Assembly (NCBI GenBank): GCA_002269645.1 | Contig: NIVC01000067.1 | Location: forward strand, 124,001-188,000 | From: Macrostomum lignano | Taxonomy: Eukaryota | Direction of reading: 5' to 3' | Length of the DNA: 64,000 nucleotides | In this document: one piece after another, positions 5,787 through 64,000 of the stretch | How the letters are laid out: every line of letters starts with the position of its first letter | Numbering within the stretch: the first letter of the stretch is position 1 | Translations under genes and position numbers: made by a program | The notes under the pieces: generated by a model | Told to the model about the DNA's origin: nothing | The model's input: only the letters and a program-made list of their open reading frames with translations | Databases searched by the model: none

Positions 5787-17916
<12,130 letters not shown>

Positions 17917-42608: not shown

Positions 42609-45600
42609 TTACTTGTCAGTGCACAGGCTGGAAAGCTTCGCAACCTTCCTACTTCTTCTGGCAGCGGTGCTGGCTGCTGACAAGTCCTTCGACAGGTTCT
42701 TCATCATCGAGTTAAAGAAGAATCTGACAACGCCGCCCTTGATGCAGTGGCCTTGAGAACAGATAGTGCGACCAAAGAAGCTTTCCATGAAGATACCGTC
42801 CTCCATCAGCTCGTCCACGAGGTTGGAGAACAGCAGCATCTGGCTCGAAGCGCAGAGCAGCTGGCATCGCAGTGTTTCGCTCTGTCGAATCTCCTCAAAA
42901 ATTCTCCAACAGTGGCTTGCTAGATTGAAAACAACTGCAGCCGGCTTGGACAGCCCGCCGCGATTGATCTCGTCAATAAAAGTGGAGGCAGCGGACTGGA
43001 CCGGAGCATCTGCTTCAAGAGGAGGCAGAACATCTGATTCAAGCAGAAGCTCCCGGCAGGACTCGCAGCCACGCCTGTTCTGCAGAAGCTTCTTTGCGAT
43101 GCAGCCGCTCATGTAGTAGATGACAGTGCAGTCGGATTCTCCAGGCTGAAAAGTCATCTCCATTTTCGCTGCCATCTCCTGAGCCAGTTTCTTCATGTTG
43201 GACTCAACATCAGGAAAATAAGTCGACTCGGCGATTGCACGGTCAATATCGTGGAGCGAAAACTGCGAGAACTTGAGCAAACTGATAGCTGCAATCTTCC
43301 GGTTGTTCTCGGAGAGCTGCCTGGCCGAGATGAAATAGTTCGCTCCAGACATCTGGCGAAGCCAACCGAATCTGCGCTCGATGCTGTCAGACTGCAGGGC
43401 ACCGAGCAGGACGTAGGAAAAGTCTTCACGGTCCAGAAGGTGCCTCGCGCACGCAGCGATAGCTCGGCAGGTATGGCGACAAGCCAAGAAGGTCTCCCTG
43501 GACAAGCCGCGGCTGCCGGAAGTTTCCCAAGACTGAAATCATGTGTGTGAAATGGAAAAGAATTTAAGCTAAAGTAAACTAAATTATTTTAAACTAAGTT
43601 TTAAACTAAAGTTTAAAATAATTTTAAGATAGCTTTTCTTTTTCTTGTCGGATACTTTTACTATACTAACACGTCCGTTATTTAAAGTAAACTATACTAT
43701 ATACTCTACTCTACTGTACTTGGCCTATTTTGGTTGTACTGTAAGTACACTTATGTTCTCTTCTTTTCCTCACCTGAAGAAACTCGCTGAATTCCTCAAG
43801 ATACTGAAGCTTCCAGTCGAGAGATGACCGCACAGGATCCTGATCTATGTCGCGCTTTCGCCGGCCTTTCGATGCCGTCTTGACATTGAGAATTTTCCAG
43901 AGCTTAAGCACAGCGCCGATGAACTCTGCGGTGTCGGTCCAGTCCTTTCCTTCGTGATCGGAGTAATACTTGAGCGCGTCGCGTGTTGACTCGCAAAAAA
44001 CCGCCGCTGCCAACTTCGCGGATGATTTTTCAATGCTTCGCGGGCTGATTACAGTTGGACTCAACTTGTGGGCCAGTCGCACTGTTTTGCAGGCTTCGAT
44101 ATTGTACAGATCAGTGATGTGCTGAAACTGGGCCTCACAAGTGCGCAGCAAAACAGGTGGAAAGGCAGGACATTGGAAGTTTTTTCTGACTTGGAAATTG
44201 TTGTAGATGTTCTTGAGGTTGTGCACAGGATCGAAGAAAACGAACATCGGCTGACCCGTGGTTTTGTCGATTACCGAGGTCTTGAGCTCTCCATCGCAGA
44301 TGTAGTCAGTGGCGAATTTACGATTGACTGCAGCATTGTCAAGTGAGACGGCAATCACAGTAAAATTCAAAGCTCGCAGCAGTTCCATCACATCTTGAAA
44401 CCAAGTGTGAAGCTTCTTGGCTGTTAAGTTGGCTACAGCCTGCATTGCTACCATGTCCTTGTACTTCCCAGCAATGGACTTAATCATGAAGCAGCAGTAC
44501 GTGGTAGCAATCGCTCCGCATTCATCAACTCCGCGTACTTGCCCGGCACTGTATTCGATTCGGCTGGCTATGTAAATCTCATCCACCATTAGCAGCACCA
44601 CTTTCTCCATCTGAGTCAGCTTACTTGCTCGAAGGCGCAGGTAGCCGTGGCTACTCAATCCATCCCGTCCAACTCGTCTGGTGACATTTTGCAGCGTTCT
44701 CACTGACGGGAGGTGAAGAACTTCTTGCTCACGCAGAGCATTGTAAGCGGAGGTGCTGATGGAGTAAATCATATAGCTTAGAACTATTAGCTCTTGAGAG
44801 TAGACTCTTGCTGCCTTTTTAGTCCTACTGAGCTGTAGCTGCTCCAGGAGAAATGCCACAGATCTGTCTTCCTTCCGTTCGAGCACATTTGTTAGGCTAT
44901 CCTCTGCCAAGTCAAGGAAGCCGTTAGCCTGCTCGGGCGATTCAGACAGATTAGTGCTTTCCTTCCAGTTCTTTACCCTTGCCATAAGATTCAGCAGCCC
45001 ACTAATAGTAGAAATCATGCCTTCGTTACCAGCAAAATCGGTCACCTTGTCCTTCGACAGCGGGGAGCCGTTGATACCAATAGAAACTTTATGATCGGAG
45101 TCAATGCAGATGGAACAGGTGATCCGGCAGACTGGCTTCACATCCAGCATGTAAATACACAACTGGCCGTCGCAGATGCTGGTGTGAAATCCAGCAGGTC
45201 GGCTCTGCTCTGCATCGAGCAACTCCTGAATCTCCACGGGTGTGCGATCGAGAATTGAGTCTTCAACAAAAAAATCGTCGATCTCACTCTGAAGACGCAT
45301 ATTGTCCAAGTCGAGTCGAGCAGAGGATGTTGCTGCACACGTGCTTCGCGCTGGTTGTCGAGGCGTTGACAGATACTTTGGTGCATTGGGAAAAATCTTA
45401 GGCACAGCATCGGGCTTCAGATATCGCTTTTTAAGCGTGCTGCTGTCCCTCTTGCGCCAGGTGCCAAAGGAGTCCCGAGACGTTTCAACGAAATCTTGCT
45501 CCGAAAAGTGCAATGAGCAAATTCGCATGTACTTCGTTGGCTCCAAGTTTTGATTGGGAATCGATTTCTTCCACTTTTCTAGCAAGTCTGGGTCGCTCAG

Positions 45601-45687
45601 TGGAAAAGAATGGAATGTAACAGTTTCAGCAGTTGCAGAACTTGTGTATCCACTTTTGCAGCCGACTGCAGAGCACTTGTTGACCAT
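42609..45687 (-). CDS. P-element transposase with N-terminal THAP domain; exons 45687-43774 and 43532-42609, 945 aa
   Basis: THAP motif MVNKCSAVGC...FHSFP...W...RICSLHF. RNase H-fold catalytic motifs MVDEIYI, SLDNAAVN, FDPVHNLKNIYNNF, QSDSIERRFGWLRQ. C-terminal YYMSGC...C..C...RGGL. Phase-0 intron CAG|GTGAGG...TTTCAG|TCT joins FLQ|SWETSG. Confidence 0.93.
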
Positions 45688-46746: not shown

Positions 46747-50803
<4,057 letters not shown>

Positions 50804-53905: not shown

Positions 53906-55317
53906 GGACAGGGTTTACCTTTAACTGATATTAGTAGTTAGAATAGTTACTAGTTAGAATAATCTATTACACGTTAGAGTGGAAAGTTTTAGAAATCTGA
54001 GGGAAAATCTGGAATGTTGTATGGAATTTTCTAGAAAAGTTTGTGGTTCAAAAACTTAATAGTTATATCGTAGAAGTTCCTACTAGAAATTTATAAAATA
54101 CATACCTTCACTACACTAAACTTGGGCCCTTGCTGTTTGTGCAACTCTCGTTTTAATACCGGAAAGCACACTGGCCTCCTGCAGTCAAAATAAATACTTG
54201 GCAGGAGACTGGGAACTGTCTGTCTTTGTTTCATCTTTCTTTTCAATTATAGGTACAAAAGACATATTTCAATAGGGCTTTTTACTCTAACCTCTGCGAG
54301 TACATTGTCTCATTGTGTCAAAAATATTATTTTGAAAGTGCATTTTTCTCTCCTGCAGCAGCGTATTAAATCTTTTTATCTTATTAATGGGAGTGCAAAA
54401 CAATGTTTGTTTTAAATTTGCATACATAATAGTTGTTAAAATCACAAAAATGTGGCATGATTTTTATAGGTATTTACATATTTACGAAAAATTATATCAT
54501 TGAGGAAAATATTACTGTCGTATAGAAATTTATCCAAATATAACCAATCAAAAAGAGTGGCGACCGAGAGTGTGCAGATCATGCCGCTCACGGGCAATGC
54601 TCCTGGTCAGCCAACTCGAGACTAGGGATTATCGAACTATACTCGCTTTGGATTCAGATTTTAAGTCATTGTGAGAGCGAAAAAAGGCTGTTGGAGAAAA
54701 AAATAGCTAGTAGAGAGTTCGGTCAAGAAGAGTGGAAGAGTGGCACTGGCCGCTCCCAGCTGGTCCCCTTTGCATGGATTGAAAGCATTATCATGGAGCA
54801 TTTCTAGCTGCTGCCTAATGGGCCAGCGCTTCTCGATGGGTCATGGGTCTGATGGACCACTTTTGTCACTGTGGCTACCCCCGGGCTTTTGATAATCCCC
54901 GGGCTAATCCCCAGGTTCTTATGCACTTAGCGCATCCATTTTTACTGCCAGTCTGGACGAGGCTTTTTACTCGTAAGTCGAGACAGCTGAACTGGAAGCT
55001 GATCCCTGGTCTCAAACTATTGATGATTTTCTGTGCACCCTTAAAACAGCAAACAACATCAAGTATCGATTGCGAGATCATTAAAAGTGAGAGCAGGGCT
55101 GGCAGCAGGGTGTCCACATGCAGCGTCAGCAGCAGCACGTCCTGCGCCGGTTGTGAGCAGTACGACTCGGTGCGGATGAAGTTCCATCGGAGTCTGTACA
55201 TCGGGCATTTTTTGAATTGATGGATTTTATACTTTAAAACTGAATGAATTCCTCAGAACTCACAGAACAATGTAAGAATTAAAAATTAGAGAGCGCAATC
55301 CGCAAAGTTTAAAATAC

Positions 55318-55521
55318 GTGGTGAGTAGCGTTGCTACTCTGAGTTAGCGAACACGTCGGGGAGGGGCCGCCCCGGGCCTGTGTGGGCTCTCCGGTGTGCG
55401 TGCTCTGTCTGGCGGGGGGAGGGGTGGGTGCTTGAGTCCCCCCCGGCCCGGGGGGGTTTTTTAGGCCGCGCGGGGCTGCTCTGGCCCAGCTACCCTGTCT
55501 CGCGTTTGCAAGCTCAATTTT
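55318..55521 (+). repeat. Split direct repeat A1
   Basis: Starts GTGGTGAGTAGCGTTGCTACTC and ends GCAAGCTCAATTTT; duplicated at 59398-59603. Confidence 0.95.
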
Positions 55522-55562
55522 GCAATTTCTCAATTTCGCGTTTGTCAGCCAACTTGCTAAGC

Positions 55563-56603
55563 ATGAATCACAACAGCGAAGACACTGCTGAAAAGCGCCT
55601 AGAAAACTATACCGCACGTGAGTTAAGGCGCATGCTGGAACAACATGGTCTGTCCAGTTCTGGAAAGAAGGCAATCCTCATAGATCGCCTACGATCGGCA
55701 CGCCATGAGGACACCGATGAGACGCGAACATCTACGGCCAGCGAGAGAGCAGAGAGCGGCCCGGGAGGACGGCAGGCGGCGTCGGACCTGGATGTTCAAG
55801 CGGAAATCCAAGCTGCAGAGAGGCGCATCCGGCTGCTGGAACTCCAGGCAAAAGAGCGACAACTCAGAAGAGAGGCCCAAGCGTCGGAGGATCTCGAACC
55901 CCACCGGGCGGCACCTGAGAACCCGGAAGACCTTGGTGAGTTACTCAACGCTGTTAACAATGAGGCCACCCAGGACCAATGCTCGAAGCCCCAAATAGAC
56001 AGAGTTAGGCAACAGAGACAGGTGATGCTCGTCACGGACTTCCTCGGGGACGCATCCCGTTCGGCCGATGCCGTCCTGGCCCAGGGCGCTGAGGGCCAAC
56101 TTGTGCTCCGAGGAGCCAAAAGCAGCAACATGAAACCAGAGGCGGTGTCCGTCGGGCAGTGGATCATGGCAAACGCCCGGATCCTCGAGTATCTCCTCAA
56201 AACGAGACAACTCACGGATCAAACAGTCTCAGAATACTTGCAATACAACGTGCAAATCGGCGAGCTCCTCGACTGCGGCTATGAAACAGCTCGGGTGATG
56301 CGATTTGACGACAGCTTCCGACGCGCACAAGCCTCCACGGGGTGCTCTTGGGCCCAGCAGAACTTCTCACTCATCGCCCGGCATCTGGTAGCCCCGCAGG
56401 CAACAGCGACAAAGCAGCGCCCGCCAAAGCCACAGACAACTGCCAGGACAGCTCAGGGCATCCCCGTCTGCCGTGTCTTCAACCTACCAGCCGGCTGCCG
56501 TTTCCCAAACTGCAAGTATGCTCACGTGTGCCGCATATGCTTGCAGCCGGATCACACGGAGTCCCGGCACGGAACTGGCGGGATACCGACCACAAAAAAC
56601 TAG
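55563..56603 (+). CDS. gag: Ngaro Gag-like protein (346 aa): N-terminal SAP domain, coiled coil, C-terminal CCCH plus CCHH-type zinc knuckles
   Basis: ATG at 55563. YTARELRRMLEQHGLSSSGKKAILIDRL fits the SAP consensus. C-terminus has CRVFNLPAGCRFPNCKYAHVCRICLQPDH. Confidence 0.85.
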   Translation: MNHNSEDTAEKRLENYTARELRRMLEQHGLSSSGKKAILIDRLRSARHEDTDETRTSTASERAESGPGGRQAASDLDVQAEIQAAERRIRLLELQAKERQLRREAQASEDLEPHRAAPENPEDLGELLNAVNNEATQDQCSKPQIDRVRQQRQVMLVTDFLGDASRSADAVLAQGAEGQLVLRGAKSSNMKPEAVSVGQWIMANARILEYLLKTRQLTDQTVSEYLQYNVQIGELLDCGYETARVMRFDDSFRRAQASTGCSWAQQNFSLIARHLVAPQATATKQRPPKPQTTARTAQGIPVCRVFNLPAGCRFPNCKYAHVCRICLQPDHTESRHGTGGIPTTKN

Positions 56604-56631
56604 AGAGCGGCGGGGTTGCGAACCCCGCCGC
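56594..56631 (+). other. Predicted -1 programmed ribosomal frameshift signal
   Basis: Slippery heptamer A_AAA_AAC (56594-56600) in gag phase, immediately before the gag TAG. Then a 6-nt spacer and a perfect 11-bp hairpin GCGGCGGGGTT-GCG-AACCCCGCCGC. Pol is in the -1 frame. Confidence 0.8.
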
Positions 56632-59164
56632 GTGCGGCCCCACGCGGCCTCCTGCTGATTTTAACTCCACTTTTATCCCTGACGCTCTTCGCGGCAACAA
56701 CGCCGACATGAATCTAGCTGCTTGGTCTAGAGTTCTTCAAGAGGATGATGACCGCGAATTTCTTATGCAAGGCCTCCAAGAGGGGTTTCGCCTGACCACC
56801 GAGTACTCATTTCGCCAATCCGAGGTCGAGAACTACGGCTCATGCAAGCCGAACGAGAGTAAAGTCGAAAGGCAGCTTTACCGCGAGATCGAGTTAGGCC
56901 GCTACCGACGCGTCGCGAAGAGACCCACGAAAGTGTCTGCCATCGGCGCCATCGCCAAACCGGATGGAAATGTTCGGCTCATCCACGACTGTAGCGCTCC
57001 GGAAGGTAACAGCGTGAACTCCCATTTCACGGCTCCCTACAAGATCAAGTTTGAGACGATCAGTGACTTGACCTCGAAGCTGCAACCGGGGGCTTTCATC
57101 GCAAAGATTGATTTGAAGGAAGCGTACCGAGCCGTGCCCGTTCATCCGTCCAACTGGGACGTTCTCGGCCTGAAGTGGAAGTTCAGCGACAGCACGCAGC
57201 CAATCTACCTGGTGGACACCCGCCTGCCGTTCGGCGCCGCGGCGTCGGTGTACCACTTTAACCGGTTGTCGCAAGCAATCACCCGGGCGATGCAACGCAG
57301 CGGCTTCCATGGTATCTGCGGTTATCTCGACGACTGGGCCGTCACGGCCCCAACCAAGAGTGAGTGCTCTGCAGCATACGAGTGTCTGCTGACTCTGGTC
57401 CAGGAGCTCGGCTTTGAAGTCAACTGGCAAAAGGTCGTCCCACCCAGCCAACGCCTCATCTTCCTGGGTGTCGAGCTTGACACGCGCACAGGCAAGATGA
57501 ACCTGCCGGCCGACAAGCGCCTTGCCCTGACAGAGCTGATCGAGGACTGTAGCGCAAAAAGCGTCATCACCAGCAAGAAGCTACAACGACTGTGCGGCAA
57601 GCTCAGTTGGTTCTGCACCGTTGCTAGGCGCGCGCGCCCTTTCCTACGCGACCTGCTGAAGCTGTGCGACCAGCACGACGGAGGCCGTATTCCGGTATCC
57701 AACGGTCTTAGGCGCACCCTGAACTGGTGGAGACAAGCTGTTTCCACTCTCTTCAGCGCGCCCATCTGGCCGCATTTCCCCCGGCGGATTGTCATCGAGT
57801 CCGACTCCTGCCTCGAGGGCGCATGCTGCGTCATCCGGGAGAACGGCGGTGTCAATTGGCTGTACGTGAATTGGCAGCTGGACGCTGGAGCTGCTTTTAG
57901 CGGGCTGCACATCAACTTCAAAGAAGCGCTGGCCCCTTTGTTGTGCACCCTGCGCCAGCCGGACGCGTTTGAACACGCCAAGATTACCGTGTACACCGAC
58001 AGCAGTGCCGCGGCGGGCCTCATCAACCGGCTGTCCTCCGGCTGTCAGCAGGTCAACGAAGTCATGAAGACTGTTGCGCTCCTCTGCATGCGGCGTAACG
58101 TCGAGATTAGGGCTTTTCATGTCCCTGGCGCTTTCCAAGTGTTTAGTGACCCGGGTTCCAGACTCCATACTCGCGAAGGCCTCCTGAATTTTGCTTTTCG
58201 CATGTACGGCGGCCTCGAGAATTTCTCCGCCGCCGAATTTGCTTGTCATGCTGCCAGTTTCTGCTCTGCGCTTTTGCTTTTGTTTCAGGTCCGGCGCTGC
58301 CGCCTCACCGCGTCACCGGGCCGTTCCGCTCTCTGCTCCGCGCCGCTTGGGCTCCAAGAACGCGCGACGCATACCGACACGCCTTCTCACGCTGGGAGGG
58401 CTTCTGCAAACGACGGGGCACCTGCCCGTCAAACGCGCCTGGCCTTGAAGTTGCCGCCTTCGTGGGATTTCTGCACCACGACGGGCAGGTTGGCGACTCG
58501 GCAGTCCAGCACGCCCTGGCCGTCATCAGCTGGGCTCATCGACTGGCGAACCGGCCAGACCCGACCACCGGCGCTATCGTGCAACTGGCAGTGCGAGGTG
58601 CCAAACGCCAGCGAGCGGCAATACAGCAGTGCCGAACAGCGAAGCCGCTGTCCAAAGAGGTCCTATTGCGAATTTACCAAGCCTGCCAGCCACTCAGCCC
58701 AGCGCAACGCTGCTTCTGGGCCGCCCTGCTGTGTGGCTTCTTCGGCCTGCTCAGATGCGCCAACCTGTTCTCACCGCGCTCATGGGCCCGCGCAAGTGAC
58801 CTGCAGTGGAACACCGACGGAGCCCGGCTCCGCATCCGGGTGTCCAAAACCAATCAGCTGGGGCAACGGGACCAGTATGTCCAGCTGCCAAGACTGGCCA
58901 GAGGACATCCGCTCTGCCCGGTGGAGGCACTCTCTAAACACCTGTCGAGCAGCGGCATCTGCCCGACCACGACACCCGACTGGCCACTGTTCAGCTTCCG
59001 CTGTAGCCGCGGTCGGCGTGCCATGTCAGCTCCGGGTTTTAACCGAATGCTTCGCCGCTCCCTTGACGCCGCAGGGGTGCCATCCTGCCAGTTCTCCGGT
59101 CACTCGATGCGACGTGGCGGCGCCTGCCACGCGTTCGAGGCGGGCCTCTCGGTCGACGACGTAA
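56600..59164 (+). CDS. pol: Ngaro Pol: reverse transcriptase plus RNase H (predicted Gag-Pol fusion ~1200 aa)
   Basis: RT motifs KIDLKEAYRAVPV, LPFGAAAS, GYLDDW, IFLGVELDT. RNase H motifs IESDSCLEG, HINFKEALA, VYTDSSAA, HVPG...SDPGSR. The frame stays open across the recombinase ORF. Confidence 0.92.
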   Translation, partial: LESGGVANPAACGPTRPPADFNSTFIPDALRGNNADMNLAAWSRVLQEDDDREFLMQGLQEGFRLTTEYSFRQSEVENYGSCKPNESKVERQLYREIELGRYRRVAKRPTKVSAIGAIAKPDGNVRLIHDCSAPEGNSVNSHFTAPYKIKFETISDLTSKLQPGAFIAKIDLKEAYRAVPVHPSNWDVLGLKWKFSDSTQPIYLVDTRLPFGAAASVYHFNRLSQAITRAMQRSGFHGICGYLDDWAVTAPTKSECSAAYECLLTLVQELGFEVNWQKVVPPSQRLIFLGVELDTRTGKMNLPADKRLALTELIEDCSAKSVITSKKLQRLCGKLSWFCTVARRARPFLRDLLKLCDQHDGGRIPVSNGLRRTLNWWRQAVSTLFSAPIWPHFPRRIVIESDSCLEGACCVIRENGGVNWLYVNWQLDAGAAFSGLHINFKEALAPLLCTLRQPDAFEHAKITVYTDSSAAAGLINRLSSGCQQVNEVMKTVALLCMRRNVEIRAFHVPGAFQVFSDPGSRLHTREGLLNFAFRMYGGLENFSAAEFACHAASFCSALLLLFQVRRCRLTASPGRSALCSAPLGLQERATHTDTPSHAGRASANDGAPARQTRLALKLPPSWDFCTTTGRLATRQSSTPWPSSAGLIDWRTGQTRPPALSCNWQCEVPNASERQYSSAEQRSRCPKRSYCEFTKPASHSAQRNAASGPPCCVASSACSDAPTCSHRAHGPAQVTCSGTPTEPGSASGCPKPISWGNGTSMSSCQDWPEDIRSARWRHSLNTCRAAASARPRHPTGHCSASAVAAVGVPCQLRVLTECFAAPLTPQGCHPASSPVTRCDVAAPATRSRRASRSTT

Positions 59165-59268
59165 AGCAGCTCGGTGGCTGGCGCAGCAACGCCGTTCTGC
59201 GCTACCTGCCGCTCTCGGGCGGCTCTCGGCGTGTTGTGGGAGCTTTGGCGGCTGCCGCCGAAGCCTAA
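58289..59268 (+). CDS. Tyrosine recombinase (YR); predicted second exon joined to gag 55563-55935
   Basis: Catalytic set intact: GLLRCANL (R), RVSKTNQLG (K), GHSMRRGGA (HxxR), GGWRSNAVLRY (W,Y). There is no in-frame ATG between the stop at 58147-58149 and the catalytic core. A strong acceptor lies at 58287-58288. Confidence 0.9.
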
Positions 59269-59323
59269 TTTTCTGTTTTACTGACTGCTTCCCCCTCGCC
59301 TCCTCTCCTGTTGTTTGGTGTTT

Positions 59324-59603
59324 GGCCTGTTCCGCCCGGGTTCGTCTTCCTCGCCCGTGCCGTGCCTTTGCCTTCCTTCCTCGGCGTCGTTCGTTAAGTG
59401 GTGAGTAGCGTTGCTACTCTGAGTTAGCGAACACGTCGGGGAGGGGCCGCCCCGGGCCTGTGTGGGCTCTCCGGTGTGCGTGCTCTGTCTGGCGGGGGGA
59501 GGGGTGGGTGCTTGAGTCCCCCCCGGCCCGGGGGGGGGGGTTTTAGGCCGCGCGGGGCTGCTCTGGCCCAGCTACCCTGTCTCGCGTTTGCAAGCTCAAT
59601 TTT
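59324..59603 (+). repeat. Split direct repeats B1 (59324-59397) and A2 (59398-59603)
   Basis: Contiguous B1-A2 junction CGTTAA|GTGGTGAG. Confidence 0.95.
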
Positions 59604-59695
59604 TTATTCGATTTTATTTTCCCCCTTTAAAGCCACATTTGTCTTTTAATCGCGTTCGAACTGAGCTCACTAAAATATAATCGACCAATCACAAG

Positions 59696-59769
59696 GGCCT
59701 GTTCCGCCCGGGTTCGTCTTCCTCGCCCGTGCCGTGCCTTTGCCTTCCTTCCTCGGCGTCGTTCGTTAA
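59696..59769 (+). repeat. Split direct repeat B2
   Basis: 74-bp exact copy of B1 (GGCCTGTTCCGCCCGGG...GTTCGTTAA). Confidence 0.95.
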
Positions 59770-60102
59770 AGAGAAATATTTGTTCCTTGATAGCAGTGAC
59801 ATATTTGTGCAGGGTGCCAAATTTAATTTATTTGCCTATTTGCAATTTATCGGCCTAAAGTTGTAGCAAAATGGGCCCACGAGTCAGAGCTCCTGCTGCA
59901 TCACGGGATTTCTAAAGCTAAATGTCACTGTGTTTCAAGCAAATTCAGCATAAATTTTACAGCTCTTCTCTGTTTAGATCCACTGAATTGCACATACTCG
60001 AGGTACATCGAGCTCTAATCCTATCAAGTTAAGAGTTAAGATCCATTCAAAACTGTGCTGCTGTGCGTGTGCTTAGCTAATCAATAACATTTTTCGCTGC
60101 GT

Positions 60103-61618
<1,516 letters not shown>

Positions 61619-61640
61619 AATCTCACAGTGTCGGTCTTAC

Positions 61641-64000
61641 TGGAAGTCGATATTCGCGCCGAAGTATGCGTCCTCTGGGTACATGAATGCGACCGTGGCC
61701 GAGTTAAACATTTCGTCAGCAATGTACACCTTACTGCAGTTGGCTCGGGCCGCATACAGGAGAGCCGTGTAGTCCGTCAAGCAGGCTTCCTTCCCTTGGA
61801 ATGTCTGGAAATTCAAATGCATCAGGAAATAAATAATCGTTATGTAGATGAAGAGAAAAAAAGTTGAATGAAGAGCTGAATGAACCTGTTCAATGCACCC
61901 AGGGATAGTGTCTGAAATCTGTAGTTTGTCTGCAACTTGTCTATATACGCCGCCGGTGCTCGTAGTCAGCAGATTGTATAGATTTGTTCCTTCAGGTACC
62001 AGTGGCTTAACAGCAGACTGAGCCACCAGATCGCTTAGCGTTTTTATGGGCAAATCCGTGAAGCTGATCGTCAGATGGGCCGTCAGGTCGCCTGCAAGTG
62101 TAGCGAAATCAAGATCCAACCCGTGACATTTCTGAGTTCAACTTTCAGGTTTCCAAGGCCTTTAAAATAAAAATATTTGCACCCTCACCCGTGTAAGTTC
62201 CATAAATGATGACGGTGAACATCCACCAGAAGGCCAGCACAGCTCTTGGAGACATGGCAAACGGATAAAAGTCCTGACCCTGCTGCATGAAGCTGCCAAC
62301 TATACTCCAAATGTACTCCTGCAGCCAGATCTCATCAGCAAAGGCAAACTCCAGTCTCAGGTTGTAGGCAGTGAATGGAGAGAAATAAGCCAGCACCCAC
62401 GTGACTGCGGCGGAGACAAAGATGAAAATAATGACTAGAATCCACACATCGTAATTGAACGGAGTGAAAACATTCCACAGCTTGGACTTGGGCGGAGGCC
62501 GGGGCACCAGAATTCCGTACGCTTCTTGGAAAAGTGGCGTTGAGAAGTCGACTACGCCGTCGCGGGTGGTAGACTTGGTGAAGGTGGAACCTCCGATGGA
62601 AACAATCTGAAGGTTGTCAAACAATATGTGATTACTAATTGTTCCATATTTATTCCAATTATGATCAACTTCGCAGGAAAATACTCACTCCTCTCTGTAC
62701 TTCTCCGACGCATCCGGAGAAGTAGCTCTTTCCAGCCTGCGGCCCGCCCCACTGGCCATCGTCAGGCACCTTCACGCTGTACCTAAGATGACGATGAAGA
62801 TTCAGCGAATCGTAAACATTGGTTCAGCACCACCTAAAATAGGCGACAGATCTAACGAAATCATTCACTCACCGAAAGTCCAAGCGCGCTGCAAGGATAT
62901 CCAAGACATCCTTTAGCATTCCACCCACAATCACCGTCTTGTTAGGAAAGGTTTGTCGATATATTGTAAAAGGAAAAATCTGAAATTTCGAATACGAGAA
63001 ACTTTAAAATCTGCAAAGATTTGTTCAAAAACTGGATCAGAAGATAACAAATATTGACCAACTTCAGTGCTACAGATACGAATAGTTTCGTTCTTGAACC
63101 CCAGGAATGTGTTTGGGAACACGAGGCTCACGCCCTTCTCTCTGAACAAAACGCTTAGCGCTCCACTCTTGGTGTTGTACATTCCCGACTGAATGAACTG
63201 AATAGGTGATGACAGTTTCTGGTTGAAGCTTCCCACCACTTCGATGCCCTGCGAGTCGAAGTGACCGGTGGTCGAGTTGAACGAGATCACTCCTCGGTTC
63301 GAGTTGTAGCCGGACATCTGTTATTACATTTCAGTGGTCAGGAGAGTAAGTCTGCATTCGATAGTAGGCGTAAAAAGCAACTCCGATTTTTAAAGCACTC
63401 AACTCACGCTTGTCAGCTTCGAATAGACGGACGGCCCCGAGCTCCACACCTGCAGAGGATTGCAGGCAGCGTTGCTGACATTGAACGTCGACTCAGTGAC
63501 CGCATCGTTCAGTGCCTTCGCCAGAGCCTCGACTGCATCAACGAATCGAGTGTCCAGTGTCTGCAATTGTCAGAATTTTCAGAATTTCAGCGTTGCAGTT
63601 TTCACATCGACCATTTTCATAGCTTGCAGCTATGCTCAACCGTTTCACTGCTCACTCGGATCCAGTCTGTGTCGCAGCTGTCGAATACGTCTCGCACAGG
63701 AGCGGAACATGATCCGGGAACGTTGATTCCGGTTGTGCCTCCTCTGACGAGAGCGACATTCGAGTTCGAGATGATGTGGTGTCTTATCTGTCCTTTTGCG
63801 ATTCCCGTATCGATGATGAGCCAAAAGTAGTTCTGCTGCATCACCAGTGACGCGTTTGCGTGATCAAGAATTGCGAAGACGTTAGCTGGTTCGGCCAGCA
63901 CCAACATGTGGAACACCTTCTTCTTCAGAAGTCGAGTCATGTGAGCGTTGAGGTCCGTGACCAGAGCTCCGCTATTTGTGTCCACTTGGAATGTGAGCGA
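61641..64000 (-). CDS. Ionotropic glutamate receptor-family subunit, partial (5' end beyond window, M4 exon not securely found); exons >64000-63656, 63560-63408, 63317-63063, 62979-62873, 62782-62689, 62606-62189, 62091-61886, 61804-61641
   Basis: S1 motifs: ICSTE|IFPF, GMLKDVLDILAARLDF, DGQWG, TRDGVVDFSTP. M1: FTPFNYDVWILV. Pore: IVGSFMQQG. M3: RAVLAFWWMFTVIIYGTYTG|DLTAHL. An S2 region follows. All listed junctions are GT-AG and phase-consistent. Confidence 0.88.

What the first reader, a model, noticed from the sequence alone, without database searches (positions are those of the whole stretch)
56594..56648. Textbook -1 ribosomal frameshift signal linking gag and pol in a DIRS-order element, with a competing second hairpin
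Seen: A_AAA_AAC in the correct phase directly before the gag stop, a 6-nt spacer, and a perfect 11-bp GC-rich stem (56607-56617/56621-56631) with a 3-nt loop. Pol is exactly in the -1 frame, giving a ~1200-aa Gag-Pol. An alternative 8-bp stem, GCCGCGTG/CACGCGGC (56627-56634/56641-56648), overlaps the first and could act as a switch. Established: X_XXY_YYZ plus a structure 5-9 nt downstream is the retroviral -1 PRF signature, and AAAAAAC is a known efficient site. How DIRS/Ngaro elements translate their overlapping ORFs is poorly characterised. Alternatives seen: pol-frame AUGs at 56537 and 56708, and a weaker phase-1 acceptor at 56716-56717 that could also take the gag donor.
Basis: partly seen in the sequence, partly recalled or inferred. 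Interest (0 to 1): 0.8.

Follow-up and report, generated by a model that had tools for sequence, protein, structure and literature searches.

The report
Gag-pol frameshift signal in Ngaro retrotransposon
An intact tyrosine-recombinase (Ngaro-type) retrotransposon carries a classic ribosome-slipping signal at the end of its gag gene, and related elements keep a slippery site at the same spot, so its polymerase is probably made as a Gag-Pol fusion, as in retroviruses.

Summary
A_AAA_AAC (56594-56600) lies in gag phase, directly before the gag stop. A 6-nt spacer follows, then a perfect 11-bp stem (56607-56617/56621-56631). The pol frame is -1 and open across the site.

The element (55315-59769) is an intact Ngaro-like retrotransposon: gag, RT/RNase H, tyrosine recombinase (YR) and split direct repeats.

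I collected 83 distant relatives (29-37% Pol identity). In the 32 non-redundant ones with pol in -1, 23 have an in-phase canonical heptamer within 24 nt of the gag stop. Only 1 and 2 have one in the two wrong phases (binomial P = 7e-21). Sixteen elements carry this same heptamer.

Most relatives lack a pol-frame AUG and show no splice-acceptor signal at the pol start, so both rivals fail comparatively.

The hairpin is the most stable local fold in the element. Relatives show no general downstream structure, and no close relative exists for a covariation test.

The "competing" stem is real but holds under 2% of the equilibrium ensemble.

Other relatives have a single leaky-context stop, a CGU_UUU_CGU +1 motif, or a fused ORF at this junction. 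YR appears to be made by splicing.

This is a known mechanism in an element order where I found no description of it.

The parts
55315..59769 (+). Whole Ngaro-like tyrosine-recombinase retrotransposon (4,455 bp). Gene order is gag, RT/RNase H, YR. No stop or frameshift interrupts any of the three genes as they stand.
   Evidence: Repeats; ORFs; Pfam SAP, RVT_1 and Phage_integrase
55315..55523 (+). Split direct repeat A1 (5' terminal repeat). About 99% identical to A2, differing by a 2-nt length change in a G run.
55563..56603 (+). gag: 346 codons from the first ATG, plus TAG. It has an N-terminal SAP domain and a C-terminal CCCH+CCHH zinc-finger motif shared with relatives.
55618..55623 (+). 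Candidate 5' splice donor GTGAGT. The exon ends at 55617, after the first base of gag codon 19 (phase 1).
   Evidence: inference; best donor-like site in the first 100 gag codons
56504..56510 (+). Second in-phase canonical heptamer, C_CCA_AAC, inside the gag/pol overlap. It has no properly spaced or exceptional structure.
   Evidence: z = -0.33; hairpin starts 0-1 nt after it
56594..56600 (+). Slippery heptamer A_AAA_AAC in gag phase, ending on the last sense codon of gag.
56601..56606 (+). 6-nt spacer, beginning with the gag stop codon TAG (56601-56603).
56607..56631 (+). Perfect 11-bp G+C-rich stem with a 3-nt loop; the putative frameshift stimulator.
56627..56648 (+). Second perfect 8-bp stem, sharing 5 nt with the 3' arm of stem 1. 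It forms only once the base of stem 1 is opened.
56594..58290 (+). Homology-supported part of pol in the -1 frame: linker, reverse transcriptase and RNase H. The conserved N-terminal Trp motif starts near 56723.
58291..59164 (+). Pol-frame tail: 290 further open codons lying over the YR gene in another frame, with no homologue.
   Evidence: codon-order shuffle P = 0.003
58267..58288 (+). Candidate 3' splice acceptor (polypyrimidine tract plus CAG). The exon starts at 58289, phase 1 in the YR frame.
58243..59268 (+). Tyrosine recombinase ORF. It is -1 relative to pol and has no ATG in its first 290 codons.
59324..59397 (+). Split direct repeat B1, 100% identical to B2.
59395..59605 (+). Split direct repeat A2.
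59696..59769 (+). Split direct repeat B2 (3' end of the element). It is separated from A2 by about 90 unique nt.

Best explanation
The element at 55315-59769 is a young, intact Ngaro-like retrotransposon.

Proposed mechanism. Ribosomes translating gag from the unspliced RNA mostly stop at TAG 56601. A fraction slip back one base on A_AAA_AAC (56594-56600). The slip happens while the 11-bp hairpin, 6 nt downstream, sits at the mRNA entrance of the ribosome. Those ribosomes continue in the pol frame and make a Gag-Pol fusion. This sets a fixed excess of Gag over RT/RNase H, as in retroviruses.

What is shown:
- the signal, its phase and its geometry;
- conservation of an in-phase slippery heptamer at the same junction in distant relatives;
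- the absence of a conserved pol start codon or splice acceptor.

What is inferred:
- that slipping actually occurs, and how often;
- that the hairpin is the stimulator;
- that the 8-bp second stem only forms as a follow-on barrier once the base of stem 1 is unwound.

The third gene, the tyrosine recombinase, is probably not reached by a second frameshift. It is more likely expressed from a spliced RNA. That RNA would join a phase-1 donor early in gag to a conserved phase-1 acceptor just upstream of the recombinase coding region.
For: Signal and geometry:
- searches confirm the heptamer, phase, spacer and stem.
- The definition in PMC3542737 is met: X_XXY_YYZ, YYY = AAA or UUU, Z not G, structure 5-9 nt downstream.
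- PMC5009743 lists A_AAA_AAC among the most shift-prone heptamers on mammalian ribosomes.

Relatives:
- Of 68 loci with an upstream gag-like ORF, 37 have pol in -1; 32 remain after removing near-identical copies.
- In those 32, 23 carry an in-phase canonical heptamer ending within 24 nt of the gag stop. The two wrong phases have 1 and 2. The +1 class has 0 of 10 and the in-frame class 2 of 20.
- The background rate is 0.74% per gag codon, giving binomial P = 7e-21.
- Sixteen elements, counting the window, use A_AAA_AAC. In seven of them TAG follows directly, as here.
- Overlaps in relatives are often only 13-25 nt, so the heptamer is almost the only place to change frame.

No conserved pol start:
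- Pol-frame ATGs before the conserved Pol N-terminus occur in only 8 of 27 (-1 class) and 3 of 16 (in-frame class). That is fewer than in the other two frames.

Hairpin rarity.

Homology and integrity:
- Gag is homologous across all classes.
- The element is intact and its terminal repeats are 99-100% identical.
Against: - There are no expression, footprint or peptide data. All evidence is comparative or thermodynamic.
- Relatives are only 29-37% identical in Pol, so the hairpin cannot be tested by covariation.
- As a class, relatives show no excess of nested downstream structure. Mean z is -0.14; the median percentile within the locus is 0.55, p = 0.26; only 6 of 30 fall in the top 10%. Pseudoknots were not assessed.
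- The window copy does have a pol-frame ATG 5 codons before the conserved Pol N-terminus (56708).
- It also has a second canonical heptamer at 56504.
- The relatives come from metagenome contigs of unknown hosts and share ancestry, so the counts are not fully independent. The tree is unbootstrapped.
Confidence: 0.8

Rival explanations
1. Pol is translated on its own from a pol-frame AUG (56708, or 56537) by leaky scanning or reinitiation. The heptamer would then be incidental.
For: Both ATGs exist in the pol frame. ATG 56708 lies 5 codons before the conserved Pol N-terminal motif.
Against: - Such an ATG is absent from 19 of 27 relatives with pol in -1 and from 13 of 16 with pol in frame. Pol-frame ATGs are rarer there than in the other two frames.
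- This model does not explain the phase-specific heptamers.
- It does not explain the single-stop arrangement in 21 loci.
- Scanning ribosomes would have to pass many upstream AUGs in about 1.1 kb of gag.
Confidence: 0.06
2. Pol is made from a spliced RNA that joins the phase-1 donor in gag (exon end 55617) to the AG at 56716-56717.
For: A good donor-like site exists at 55618.
Against: - The site has almost no polypyrimidine tract: acceptor score 6.2, against 10.9 for the site ahead of YR.
- Across 45 relatives, the best acceptor-like site ahead of pol is no better than in control windows (median control fraction 0.47, p = 0.22).
- Its phase there is random: 16, 16 and 13.
- By contrast, the acceptor ahead of YR is in one phase in 34 of 35 loci.
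Confidence: 0.03
3. The frame change is not ribosomal. The options are polymerase slippage on the run of six A's during transcription or reverse transcription, a one-base deletion, or an assembly error in a formerly fused gag-pol ORF.
For: Adding one A to the run would place gag and pol in one frame. Two relatives (L024, L026) do have gag and pol in a single ORF.
Against: - Slippage by a polymerase has no codon-phase requirement, yet the heptamers are in phase in 23 loci against 1 and 2 in the wrong phases.
- The same A_AAA_AAC-plus-stop arrangement recurs in independent assemblies and in divergent branches.
- A strong hairpin at canonical spacing is unexplained by these models.
Confidence: 0.05
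4. The main slip site is the upstream heptamer C_CCA_AAC (56504-56510) rather than 56594-56600.
For: It is canonical, in phase, and the pol frame is already open there.
Against: - The only local hairpin starts 0-1 nt after it, and the fold is unexceptional (z = -0.33).
- In relatives the pol frame usually opens only 13-25 nt before the gag stop, and the heptamer lies 0-21 nt from the stop. That matches 56594, not 56504.
- A shift at 56504 would remove the second half of the conserved gag zinc-finger motif from the fusion.
Confidence: 0.05

Closest known systems
Gag-pol (gag-pro) -1 programmed frameshifting of retroviruses and animal LTR retrotransposons
   Same: - A heptamer of the X_XXY_YYZ class lies at the end of gag, pol is in -1, and a structure follows after 5-9 nt (PMC3542737).
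[quoted passage not shown]
- That review reports a 2003 survey in which 28 of 51 animal LTR retroelements had pol in -1, many with classical heptamers.
   Different: - The host element is not an LTR element or a retrovirus. It has no protease and no DDE integrase. It has a tyrosine recombinase and split direct repeats instead of LTRs.
- Neither the review nor any paper found mentions frameshifting in DIRS or Ngaro elements.
Simple-hairpin frameshift stimulators (HIV-1 gag-pol; astrovirus ORF1a/1b). Named from my own knowledge; the sequences were not retrieved.
   Same: The stimulator is a plain stem-loop of about 11 bp rather than a pseudoknot, at canonical spacing. Astroviridae are listed as -1 frameshifters in PMC3542737.
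   Different: - The 3-nt loop is very tight and the stem is almost wholly G-C.
- A second 8-bp stem can take over the freed 3' arm.
- No sequence relationship was detected, and there is no Rfam match.
Ngaro-like retrotransposons (order DIRS), e.g. DIRS-53_XT of Xenopus as described in PMC9210276
   Same: - The order gag, RT/RH, YR, with overlapping reading frames.
- Split direct repeats A1...B1-A2-B2. Xenopus has A of 236 bp and B of 152 bp. Here A is about 208 bp and B is 74 bp.
   Different: - Pol is at most 40% identical to anything found (29-37% in the trimmed alignment).
- About 90 nt of unique sequence separates A2 from B2.
- There is no hydrolase ORF.
- Gag carries a SAP domain.
Influenza A PA-X type +1 frameshift cassette (UCC_UUU_CGU; PMC5009743). 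Relevant to relatives, not to the window.
   Same: Six relatives that form one clade have pol in +1. They share an in-phase CGU_UUU_CGU just before the gag stop.
   Different: - The codon before UUU is CGU, not UCC.
- The setting is a retrotransposon gag-pol junction, not an internal site in a viral polymerase gene.
- It is untested.
Gag-pol stop-codon readthrough (gammaretrovirus type III, UAG-G plus structure; type II, UGA-CUA or UGA-CGG; PMC3542737). Relevant to relatives.
   Same: - 21 relatives have gag and pol in one frame separated by exactly one stop.
- That stop is never TAA: 0 of 20, against 14 of 32 in the -1 class, Fisher p = 3e-4.
- The contexts are UGA-C (mostly CUA or CG) or UAG-G.
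- There is a modest excess of downstream structure (p = 0.03).
   Different: The host elements are tyrosine-recombinase retrotransposons, and no specific pseudoknot was identified.

Membership tests
Canonical eukaryotic -1 programmed ribosomal frameshift signal (definition in PMC3542737) | Heptamer X_XXY_YYZ in the zero-frame phase, with YYY = AAA or UUU and Z = A, C or U | tested here: met
   A_AAA_AAC at 56594-56600; gag codons are ACA AAA AAC TAG
Canonical eukaryotic -1 programmed ribosomal frameshift signal (definition in PMC3542737) | Downstream ORF in the -1 frame, open across the slip site, and encoding a real protein | tested here: met
   The pol ORF 56342-59164 is -1 to gag. RVT_1 scores E = 4e-12, and 49 homologues were found.
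Canonical eukaryotic -1 programmed ribosomal frameshift signal (definition in PMC3542737) | Stable RNA structure starting 5-9 nt after the heptamer | tested here: met
   6-nt spacer and an 11-bp perfect stem at -23.4 kcal/mol. It ranks 1 of 1470 windows in the element.
Canonical eukaryotic -1 programmed ribosomal frameshift signal (definition in PMC3542737) | Slip site conserved in related elements | tested here: met
   23 of 32 loci in phase, against 1 and 2 in the wrong phases; P = 7e-21
Canonical eukaryotic -1 programmed ribosomal frameshift signal (definition in PMC3542737) | Stimulatory structure conserved or covarying in related elements | tested here: inconclusive
   There is no general excess of nested structure in relatives. 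No relative is closer than 40% Pol identity, so covariation cannot be counted. Pseudoknots were not assessed.
Canonical eukaryotic -1 programmed ribosomal frameshift signal (definition in PMC3542737) | A transframe product is actually made | not testable with these tools
   No expression, footprint or peptide data are available for this unknown host.
Ngaro-like retrotransposon (order DIRS) | Reverse transcriptase and RNase H, with a tyrosine recombinase in place of a DDE integrase, and no protease | tested here: met
   - RVT_1 is found.
- The RNase H acidic residues are invariant in the Pol alignment.
- The YR ORF hits Phage_integrase at E = 4e-5, 23.9 bits, just below Pfam's 27.1 cut-off.
- That ORF is homologous to the YR ORFs of about 40 relatives and ends with the H-x-x-R...Y motif.
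- No protease or integrase domain is found.
Ngaro-like retrotransposon (order DIRS) | Gene order gag, RT/RH, YR, with no methyltransferase domain (present in DIRS1-like and PAT-like elements) | tested here: met
   ORF order. There is no methyltransferase hit, and no room for one between RNase H and YR.
Ngaro-like retrotransposon (order DIRS) | Split direct repeats A1 ... B1 A2 B2 rather than inverted repeats with an internal complementary region | tested here: met
   A1/A2 and B1/B2 were found, and no inverted repeats. One departure: about 90 unique nt lie between A2 and B2.
Rfam frameshift-element families | Match to a curated covariance model | tested here: not met
   No match at E up to 1 in 55000-60100

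The most novel reading that the evidence does not exclude
This Ngaro-like lineage may solve one problem in every known way. The problem is making a little Pol behind a lot of Gag, and the solutions all sit at one homologous junction:
- -1 frameshifting, mostly on A_AAA_AAC;
- readthrough of a single leaky stop;
- a +1 shift on an influenza PA-X-like CGU_UUU_CGU motif;
- outright fusion of gag and pol.

The lineage appears to have switched between these repeatedly. The recombinase would be made from a spliced RNA through a phase-1 acceptor conserved in 34 of 35 elements.

That would give tyrosine-recombinase retrotransposons a retrovirus-like three-tier expression plan: Gag, Gag-Pol by recoding, and a third gene by splicing. 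It would also be the first retroelement use of the UUU_CGU type of +1 site that I am aware of.

In the window's own copy, the two overlapping stems would act as successive barriers to the ribosome.
Probability: 0.45. Interest if true: 0.65.

Novelty: new member of a known kind. Interest (0 to 1): 0.5.

Why it matters
How DIRS-order elements translate their overlapping frames has been left open. Papers note only that the ORFs overlap or are 'frameshifted' (PMC3783388, PMC9210276). A comprehensive 2016 recoding review does not mention these elements.

The comparative data here turn that gap into a specific model that can be checked. Pol would be made by recoding at the end of gag, with the slip site predicted to the base. 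The recombinase would be made by splicing.

The model also improves annotation. Gene callers currently give these elements arbitrary non-AUG Pol starts.

For recoding research, the family offers a natural series in which -1, +1, readthrough and fused solutions replace one another at one junction.

For the window itself the result is ordinary in mechanism. It is a textbook retroviral-type signal.

Tried and rejected
- Close relatives for stem covariation: none found. The Pol search gave at most 40% identity. The gag search in the large database gave nothing. There is no other copy in the window.
- Host identification through the THAP9-like ORF: only 45-47% hits in marine metagenomes, with sea spiders as the only named species. 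The host remains unknown, apart from being an animal-like genome.
- Rfam scan of the element: no match.
- A second -1 frameshift from pol into YR: rejected. No in-phase heptamer lies near the pol stop in any pol/YR overlap, in the window or in relatives. The frame relation varies: 21 are -1, 13 are +1 and 2 are in frame.
- Mapping the splice donor by gag homology: failed. Only the C-terminal half of gag aligns with relatives. A crude donor scan was only suggestive.
- Equilibrium 'switch' between the two stems: rejected on energies.
- Literature: no paper in the library links Ngaro or DIRS elements with ribosomal frameshifting or native splicing. Goodwin & Poulter 2004 is not held, so earlier remarks there cannot be excluded.
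- The alignment tools print a consensus line by default. I did not use, save or reproduce it.

Full report
**1. The observation**

I read 56400-56800 and listed the ORFs.
- The gag-frame ORF ends with TAG at 56601-56603, preceded by ACA AAA AAC. A_AAA_AAC at 56594-56600 is therefore in the X_XXY_YYZ phase.
- The 940-codon ORF 56342-59164 is in the -1 frame and is already open at the site.
- Bases 56607-56617 pair perfectly with 56621-56631: 11 bp, a 3-nt loop and a 6-nt spacer.
- RNAfold recovers this stem as both the MFE and the centroid structure (-30.5 kcal/mol for 67 nt, z = -2.4). The stem alone is worth -23.4 kcal/mol.
- It is the most stable 45-nt window of the whole element, rank 1 of 1470.
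- It is one of only two distinct perfect hairpins of at least 10 bp in the 64-kb window.
- A stem this long arose in 1 of 300 Markov simulations of the element.

**2. What the element is**

- Pfam finds a SAP domain in the first ORF, RVT_1 in the second, and Phage_integrase in a third ORF, 58243-59268. The integrase hit is E = 4e-5, just under Pfam's cut-off.
- The real gag start is most likely ATG 55563, giving 346 codons.
- The repeats are of the split-direct type:
  - A1 at 55315-55523
  - B1 at 59324-59397
  - A2 at 59395-59605
  - B2 at 59696-59769
  - The copies are 99-100% identical.
- There is no methyltransferase, protease or DDE integrase.

By the descriptions in PMC9210276 and PMC7192593, this is an Ngaro-like member of the DIRS order. 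None of its three genes is interrupted. With near-identical repeats, it looks like a recent insertion.

The surrounding window is an animal-type genome:
- a THAP9-like transposase ORF;
- a C2H2 zinc-finger ORF;
- long (TATC)n arrays.
- The species could not be identified.

**3. Relatives**

- A Pol query found only distant homologues, at most 40% identical. Most came from marine metagenomes, and two from the cnidarian Hydractinia.
- I fetched three contigs by identity and 80 more with a Pol alignment.
- Their upstream ORFs are true gag homologues of the window's gag: E from 1e-26 to 1e-19 in a local search. They share a C-terminal CCCH+CCHH zinc-finger motif, and the junction lies 8-25 residues after it.

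**4. The junction in relatives**

68 loci have an upstream ORF. They fall into these classes:

| Arrangement | Loci |
|---|---|
| pol in -1 | 37 |
| same frame as gag, exactly one stop between | 21 |
| pol in +1 | 10 |
| gag and pol fused in one ORF (two further loci) | 2 |

After removing near-identical copies, the -1 class has 32 loci.
- 23 of them have a canonical in-phase heptamer ending within 24 nt of the gag stop.
- Only 1 and 2 loci have one in the two wrong phases.
- The +1 class has 0 of 10 and the in-frame class 2 of 20.
- The background in gag bodies is 0.74% per codon, giving binomial P = 7e-21.

The heptamers found are:

| Heptamer | Elements |
|---|---|
| A_AAA_AAC | 16 (including the window) |
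| G_GGA_AAC | 2 |
| U_UUA_AAC | 2 |
| G_GGA_AAA | 1 |
| C_CCA_AAA | 1 |
| A_AAA_AAU | 1 |

- The first three are named among the most shift-prone on mammalian ribosomes in PMC5009743.
- In seven elements the A_AAA_AAC is followed directly by TAG, exactly as in the window.
- Many overlaps are only 13-25 nt long, so there is hardly anywhere else to change frame.
- Three loci have G_GAA_AAC. Its GGA P-site deviation is a tolerated type according to PMC3542737.
- Three non-redundant loci (seven contigs) share an unexplained C_CCC_CAA.

The phase specificity argues for ribosomal rather than polymerase slippage. So does the use of heptamers with runs of only three or four identical bases.

**5. Rivals for Pol expression**

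Own start codon. A pol-frame ATG between the opening of the pol frame and the conserved Pol N-terminal Trp motif occurs in only 8 of 27 -1 loci and 3 of 16 in-frame loci. That is fewer than in the other two frames. Pol has no conserved start of its own.

Splicing into pol.
- The best acceptor-like site ahead of pol is no better than control windows (median control fraction 0.47, p = 0.22).
- Its phase is random: 16, 16 and 13.
- The window's AG at 56716-56717 scores poorly, 6.2.

Upstream heptamer. C_CCA_AAC at 56504 has no properly spaced or unusual structure. It does not match the position of the conserved site.

**6. The hairpin and the second stem**

As a class, relatives show no excess of nested structure after the slip site.
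- Mean z is -0.14.
- The median within-locus percentile is 0.55, p = 0.26.
- Only 6 of 30 fall in the top 10%, and the window is the extreme case.

The distance from the gag stop to the conserved Pol motif is 119 nt in the window, against a median of 46-48 nt in relatives. I infer that the hairpin region is a lineage-specific addition to the linker. Its role as stimulator rests on position and strength alone.

The second stem is not an equilibrium competitor. Its pair probabilities are at most 1.8%, against 97% or more for ten of stem 1's eleven pairs (0.67 for the loop-closing pair). When the first 5 nt of stem 1 are removed, as by an entering ribosome, the best fold changes. It becomes the upper 6 bp of stem 1 next to the 8-bp stem, at -24.4 kcal/mol.

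Two of the element's three distinct perfect hairpin sequences of at least 8 bp lie within 42 nt of each other here. The Markov expectation is 0.64 per element. The second stem may therefore be a follow-on barrier, but that is speculation.

**7. Size of the product**

The frames as they stand give about 1,200 codons.
- Pol homology stops near 58290.
- In relatives the pol stop typically follows within a few dozen nucleotides.
- In the window the pol frame stays open for 290 more codons across the recombinase gene.
- Shuffling the codon order of that gene reproduces this in only 0.3% of trials, with a median open length of 36 codons.

I cannot explain this.

**8. The recombinase gene**

- Pol to YR is -1 in the window, but across relatives the relation is mixed: 21 are -1, 13 are +1 and 2 are in frame.
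- No in-phase heptamer lies near the pol stop in any of these overlaps; the four in-phase matches found lie 63 or more nt upstream of it.
- The YR ORF usually lacks an early ATG.

Instead, a polypyrimidine tract plus CAG lies 41-74 nt upstream of the start of YR homology.
- It is in the same phase (phase 1) in 34 of 35 loci, P = 1e-15.
- In 21 of 35 loci no control window in pol has an equally good site.
- In the window it is 58267-58288, with the exon starting at 58289.

On the donor side:
- A strong phase-1 donor-like site, CAC|GTGAGT, lies at gag codon 19, with the exon ending at 55617.
- Good donor-like sites in the first 100 gag codons of relatives are phase 1 in 13 of 17 cases.
- Their positions cannot be aligned, because the gag N-termini are not conserved.

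I conclude that YR is probably expressed from a spliced RNA.

**9. Other junction classes**

In-frame class:
- The single stop is never TAA: 0 of 20, against 14 of 32 in the -1 class, Fisher p = 3e-4.
- Its contexts are UGA-CUA, UGA-CG and other UGA-C, or UAG-G. These correspond to the type II and type III readthrough contexts of PMC3542737.
- Downstream structure is modestly enriched (p = 0.03).

+1 class:
- Six loci form one clade.
- They share an in-phase CGU_UUU_CGU. It resembles the influenza PA-X cassette UCC_UUU_CGU (PMC5009743).

In an unbootstrapped NJ tree the classes interleave, with A_AAA_AAC scattered throughout.

**10. Comparison and novelty**

The mechanism proposed for the window is the textbook retroviral one.
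- What seems new is its host: an element order for which I found no description of frameshifting.
- Goodwin & Poulter 2004 could not be read, so I cannot rule out an earlier remark there.
- I rate it a new member of a known kind, with interest 0.5.
- The family-wide picture is more interesting than the single signal. That picture is four recoding solutions at one junction, plus a spliced third gene.

Noticed in passing
window 58267-58289; L002-L078: A splice-acceptor-like site (polypyrimidine tract plus CAG) lies 41-74 nt upstream of the start of recombinase homology. It is in the same phase in 34 of 35 elements, whatever the pol-to-YR frame relation. This suggests the recombinase is made from a spliced RNA.
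   Followed up: yes
window 55618-55623: There is a strong donor-like site, CAC|GTGAGT, at gag codon 19. It is phase 1 and compatible with the YR acceptor. In relatives, good donor-like sites early in gag are phase 1 in 13 of 17 cases, but they cannot be aligned.
   Followed up: partly
L007, L010, L012, L014, L015, L018, L025, L028, L034, L036, L037, L039, L049, L054, L055, L060, L064, L067, L071, L072: Gag and pol share a frame and are separated by exactly one stop codon. The stop is never TAA. The contexts (UGA-CUA, UGA-CG, UAG-G) match known readthrough types.
   Followed up: partly
L004, L005, L008, L009, L016, L027: One clade has pol in +1 and a conserved in-phase CGU_UUU_CGU just before the gag stop. 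This resembles the influenza PA-X +1 shift cassette.
   Followed up: partly
L020/L022/L023/L080 and L043/L045/L047/L048; L069, L070, L078, L073: Some -1 junctions lack a canonical heptamer but carry conserved motifs. Two sister groups share C_CCC_CAA. A third group has G_GAA_AAC or G_GAU_UUU.
   Followed up: no
L024, L026: Gag (with its zinc-finger motif) and pol lie in one uninterrupted ORF. This is a fourth arrangement at the same junction.
   Followed up: no
window 58291-59164: The pol frame stays open for 290 codons over the recombinase gene. Codon-order shuffles reach this in 0.3% of trials, with a median of 36 codons. Relatives end pol shortly after the acceptor. This is unexplained.
   Followed up: partly
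L001: The contig carries two tandem gag-pol units 3,656 nt apart and no recombinase ORF. It could be a tandem array, a YR-less derivative, or an assembly of a circular form.
   Followed up: no
window 55599-55700 (SAP); Gag starts with a SAP DNA-binding domain. Only the C-terminal half of gag (window residues ~145-340) is conserved in relatives.
   Followed up: partly
window 59606-59695; 55438-55456 and 59518-59536: About 90 unique nt separate repeat A2 from B2, which is unusual for split direct repeats. Each A repeat holds a perfect 8-bp C/G hairpin next to a G run whose length differs between the two copies.
   Followed up: no
L002 564-1613; L003 469-2048: Some relatives carry extra upstream ORFs: a NADAR domain, and a GDSL/SGNH-type lipase as a weak hit. 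This recalls the hydrolase ORF reported for some Ngaro elements.
   Followed up: no
window 43711-45687 (-), 49145-50803 (+), 11781-15527 and 60100-61690: Three other features stand out in the window: an intact 657-codon THAP9-like (P-element type) transposase ORF, a C2H2 zinc-finger ORF, and two long arrays of the same (TATC)n-type microsatellite, one abutting the element's 3' side.
   Followed up: partly
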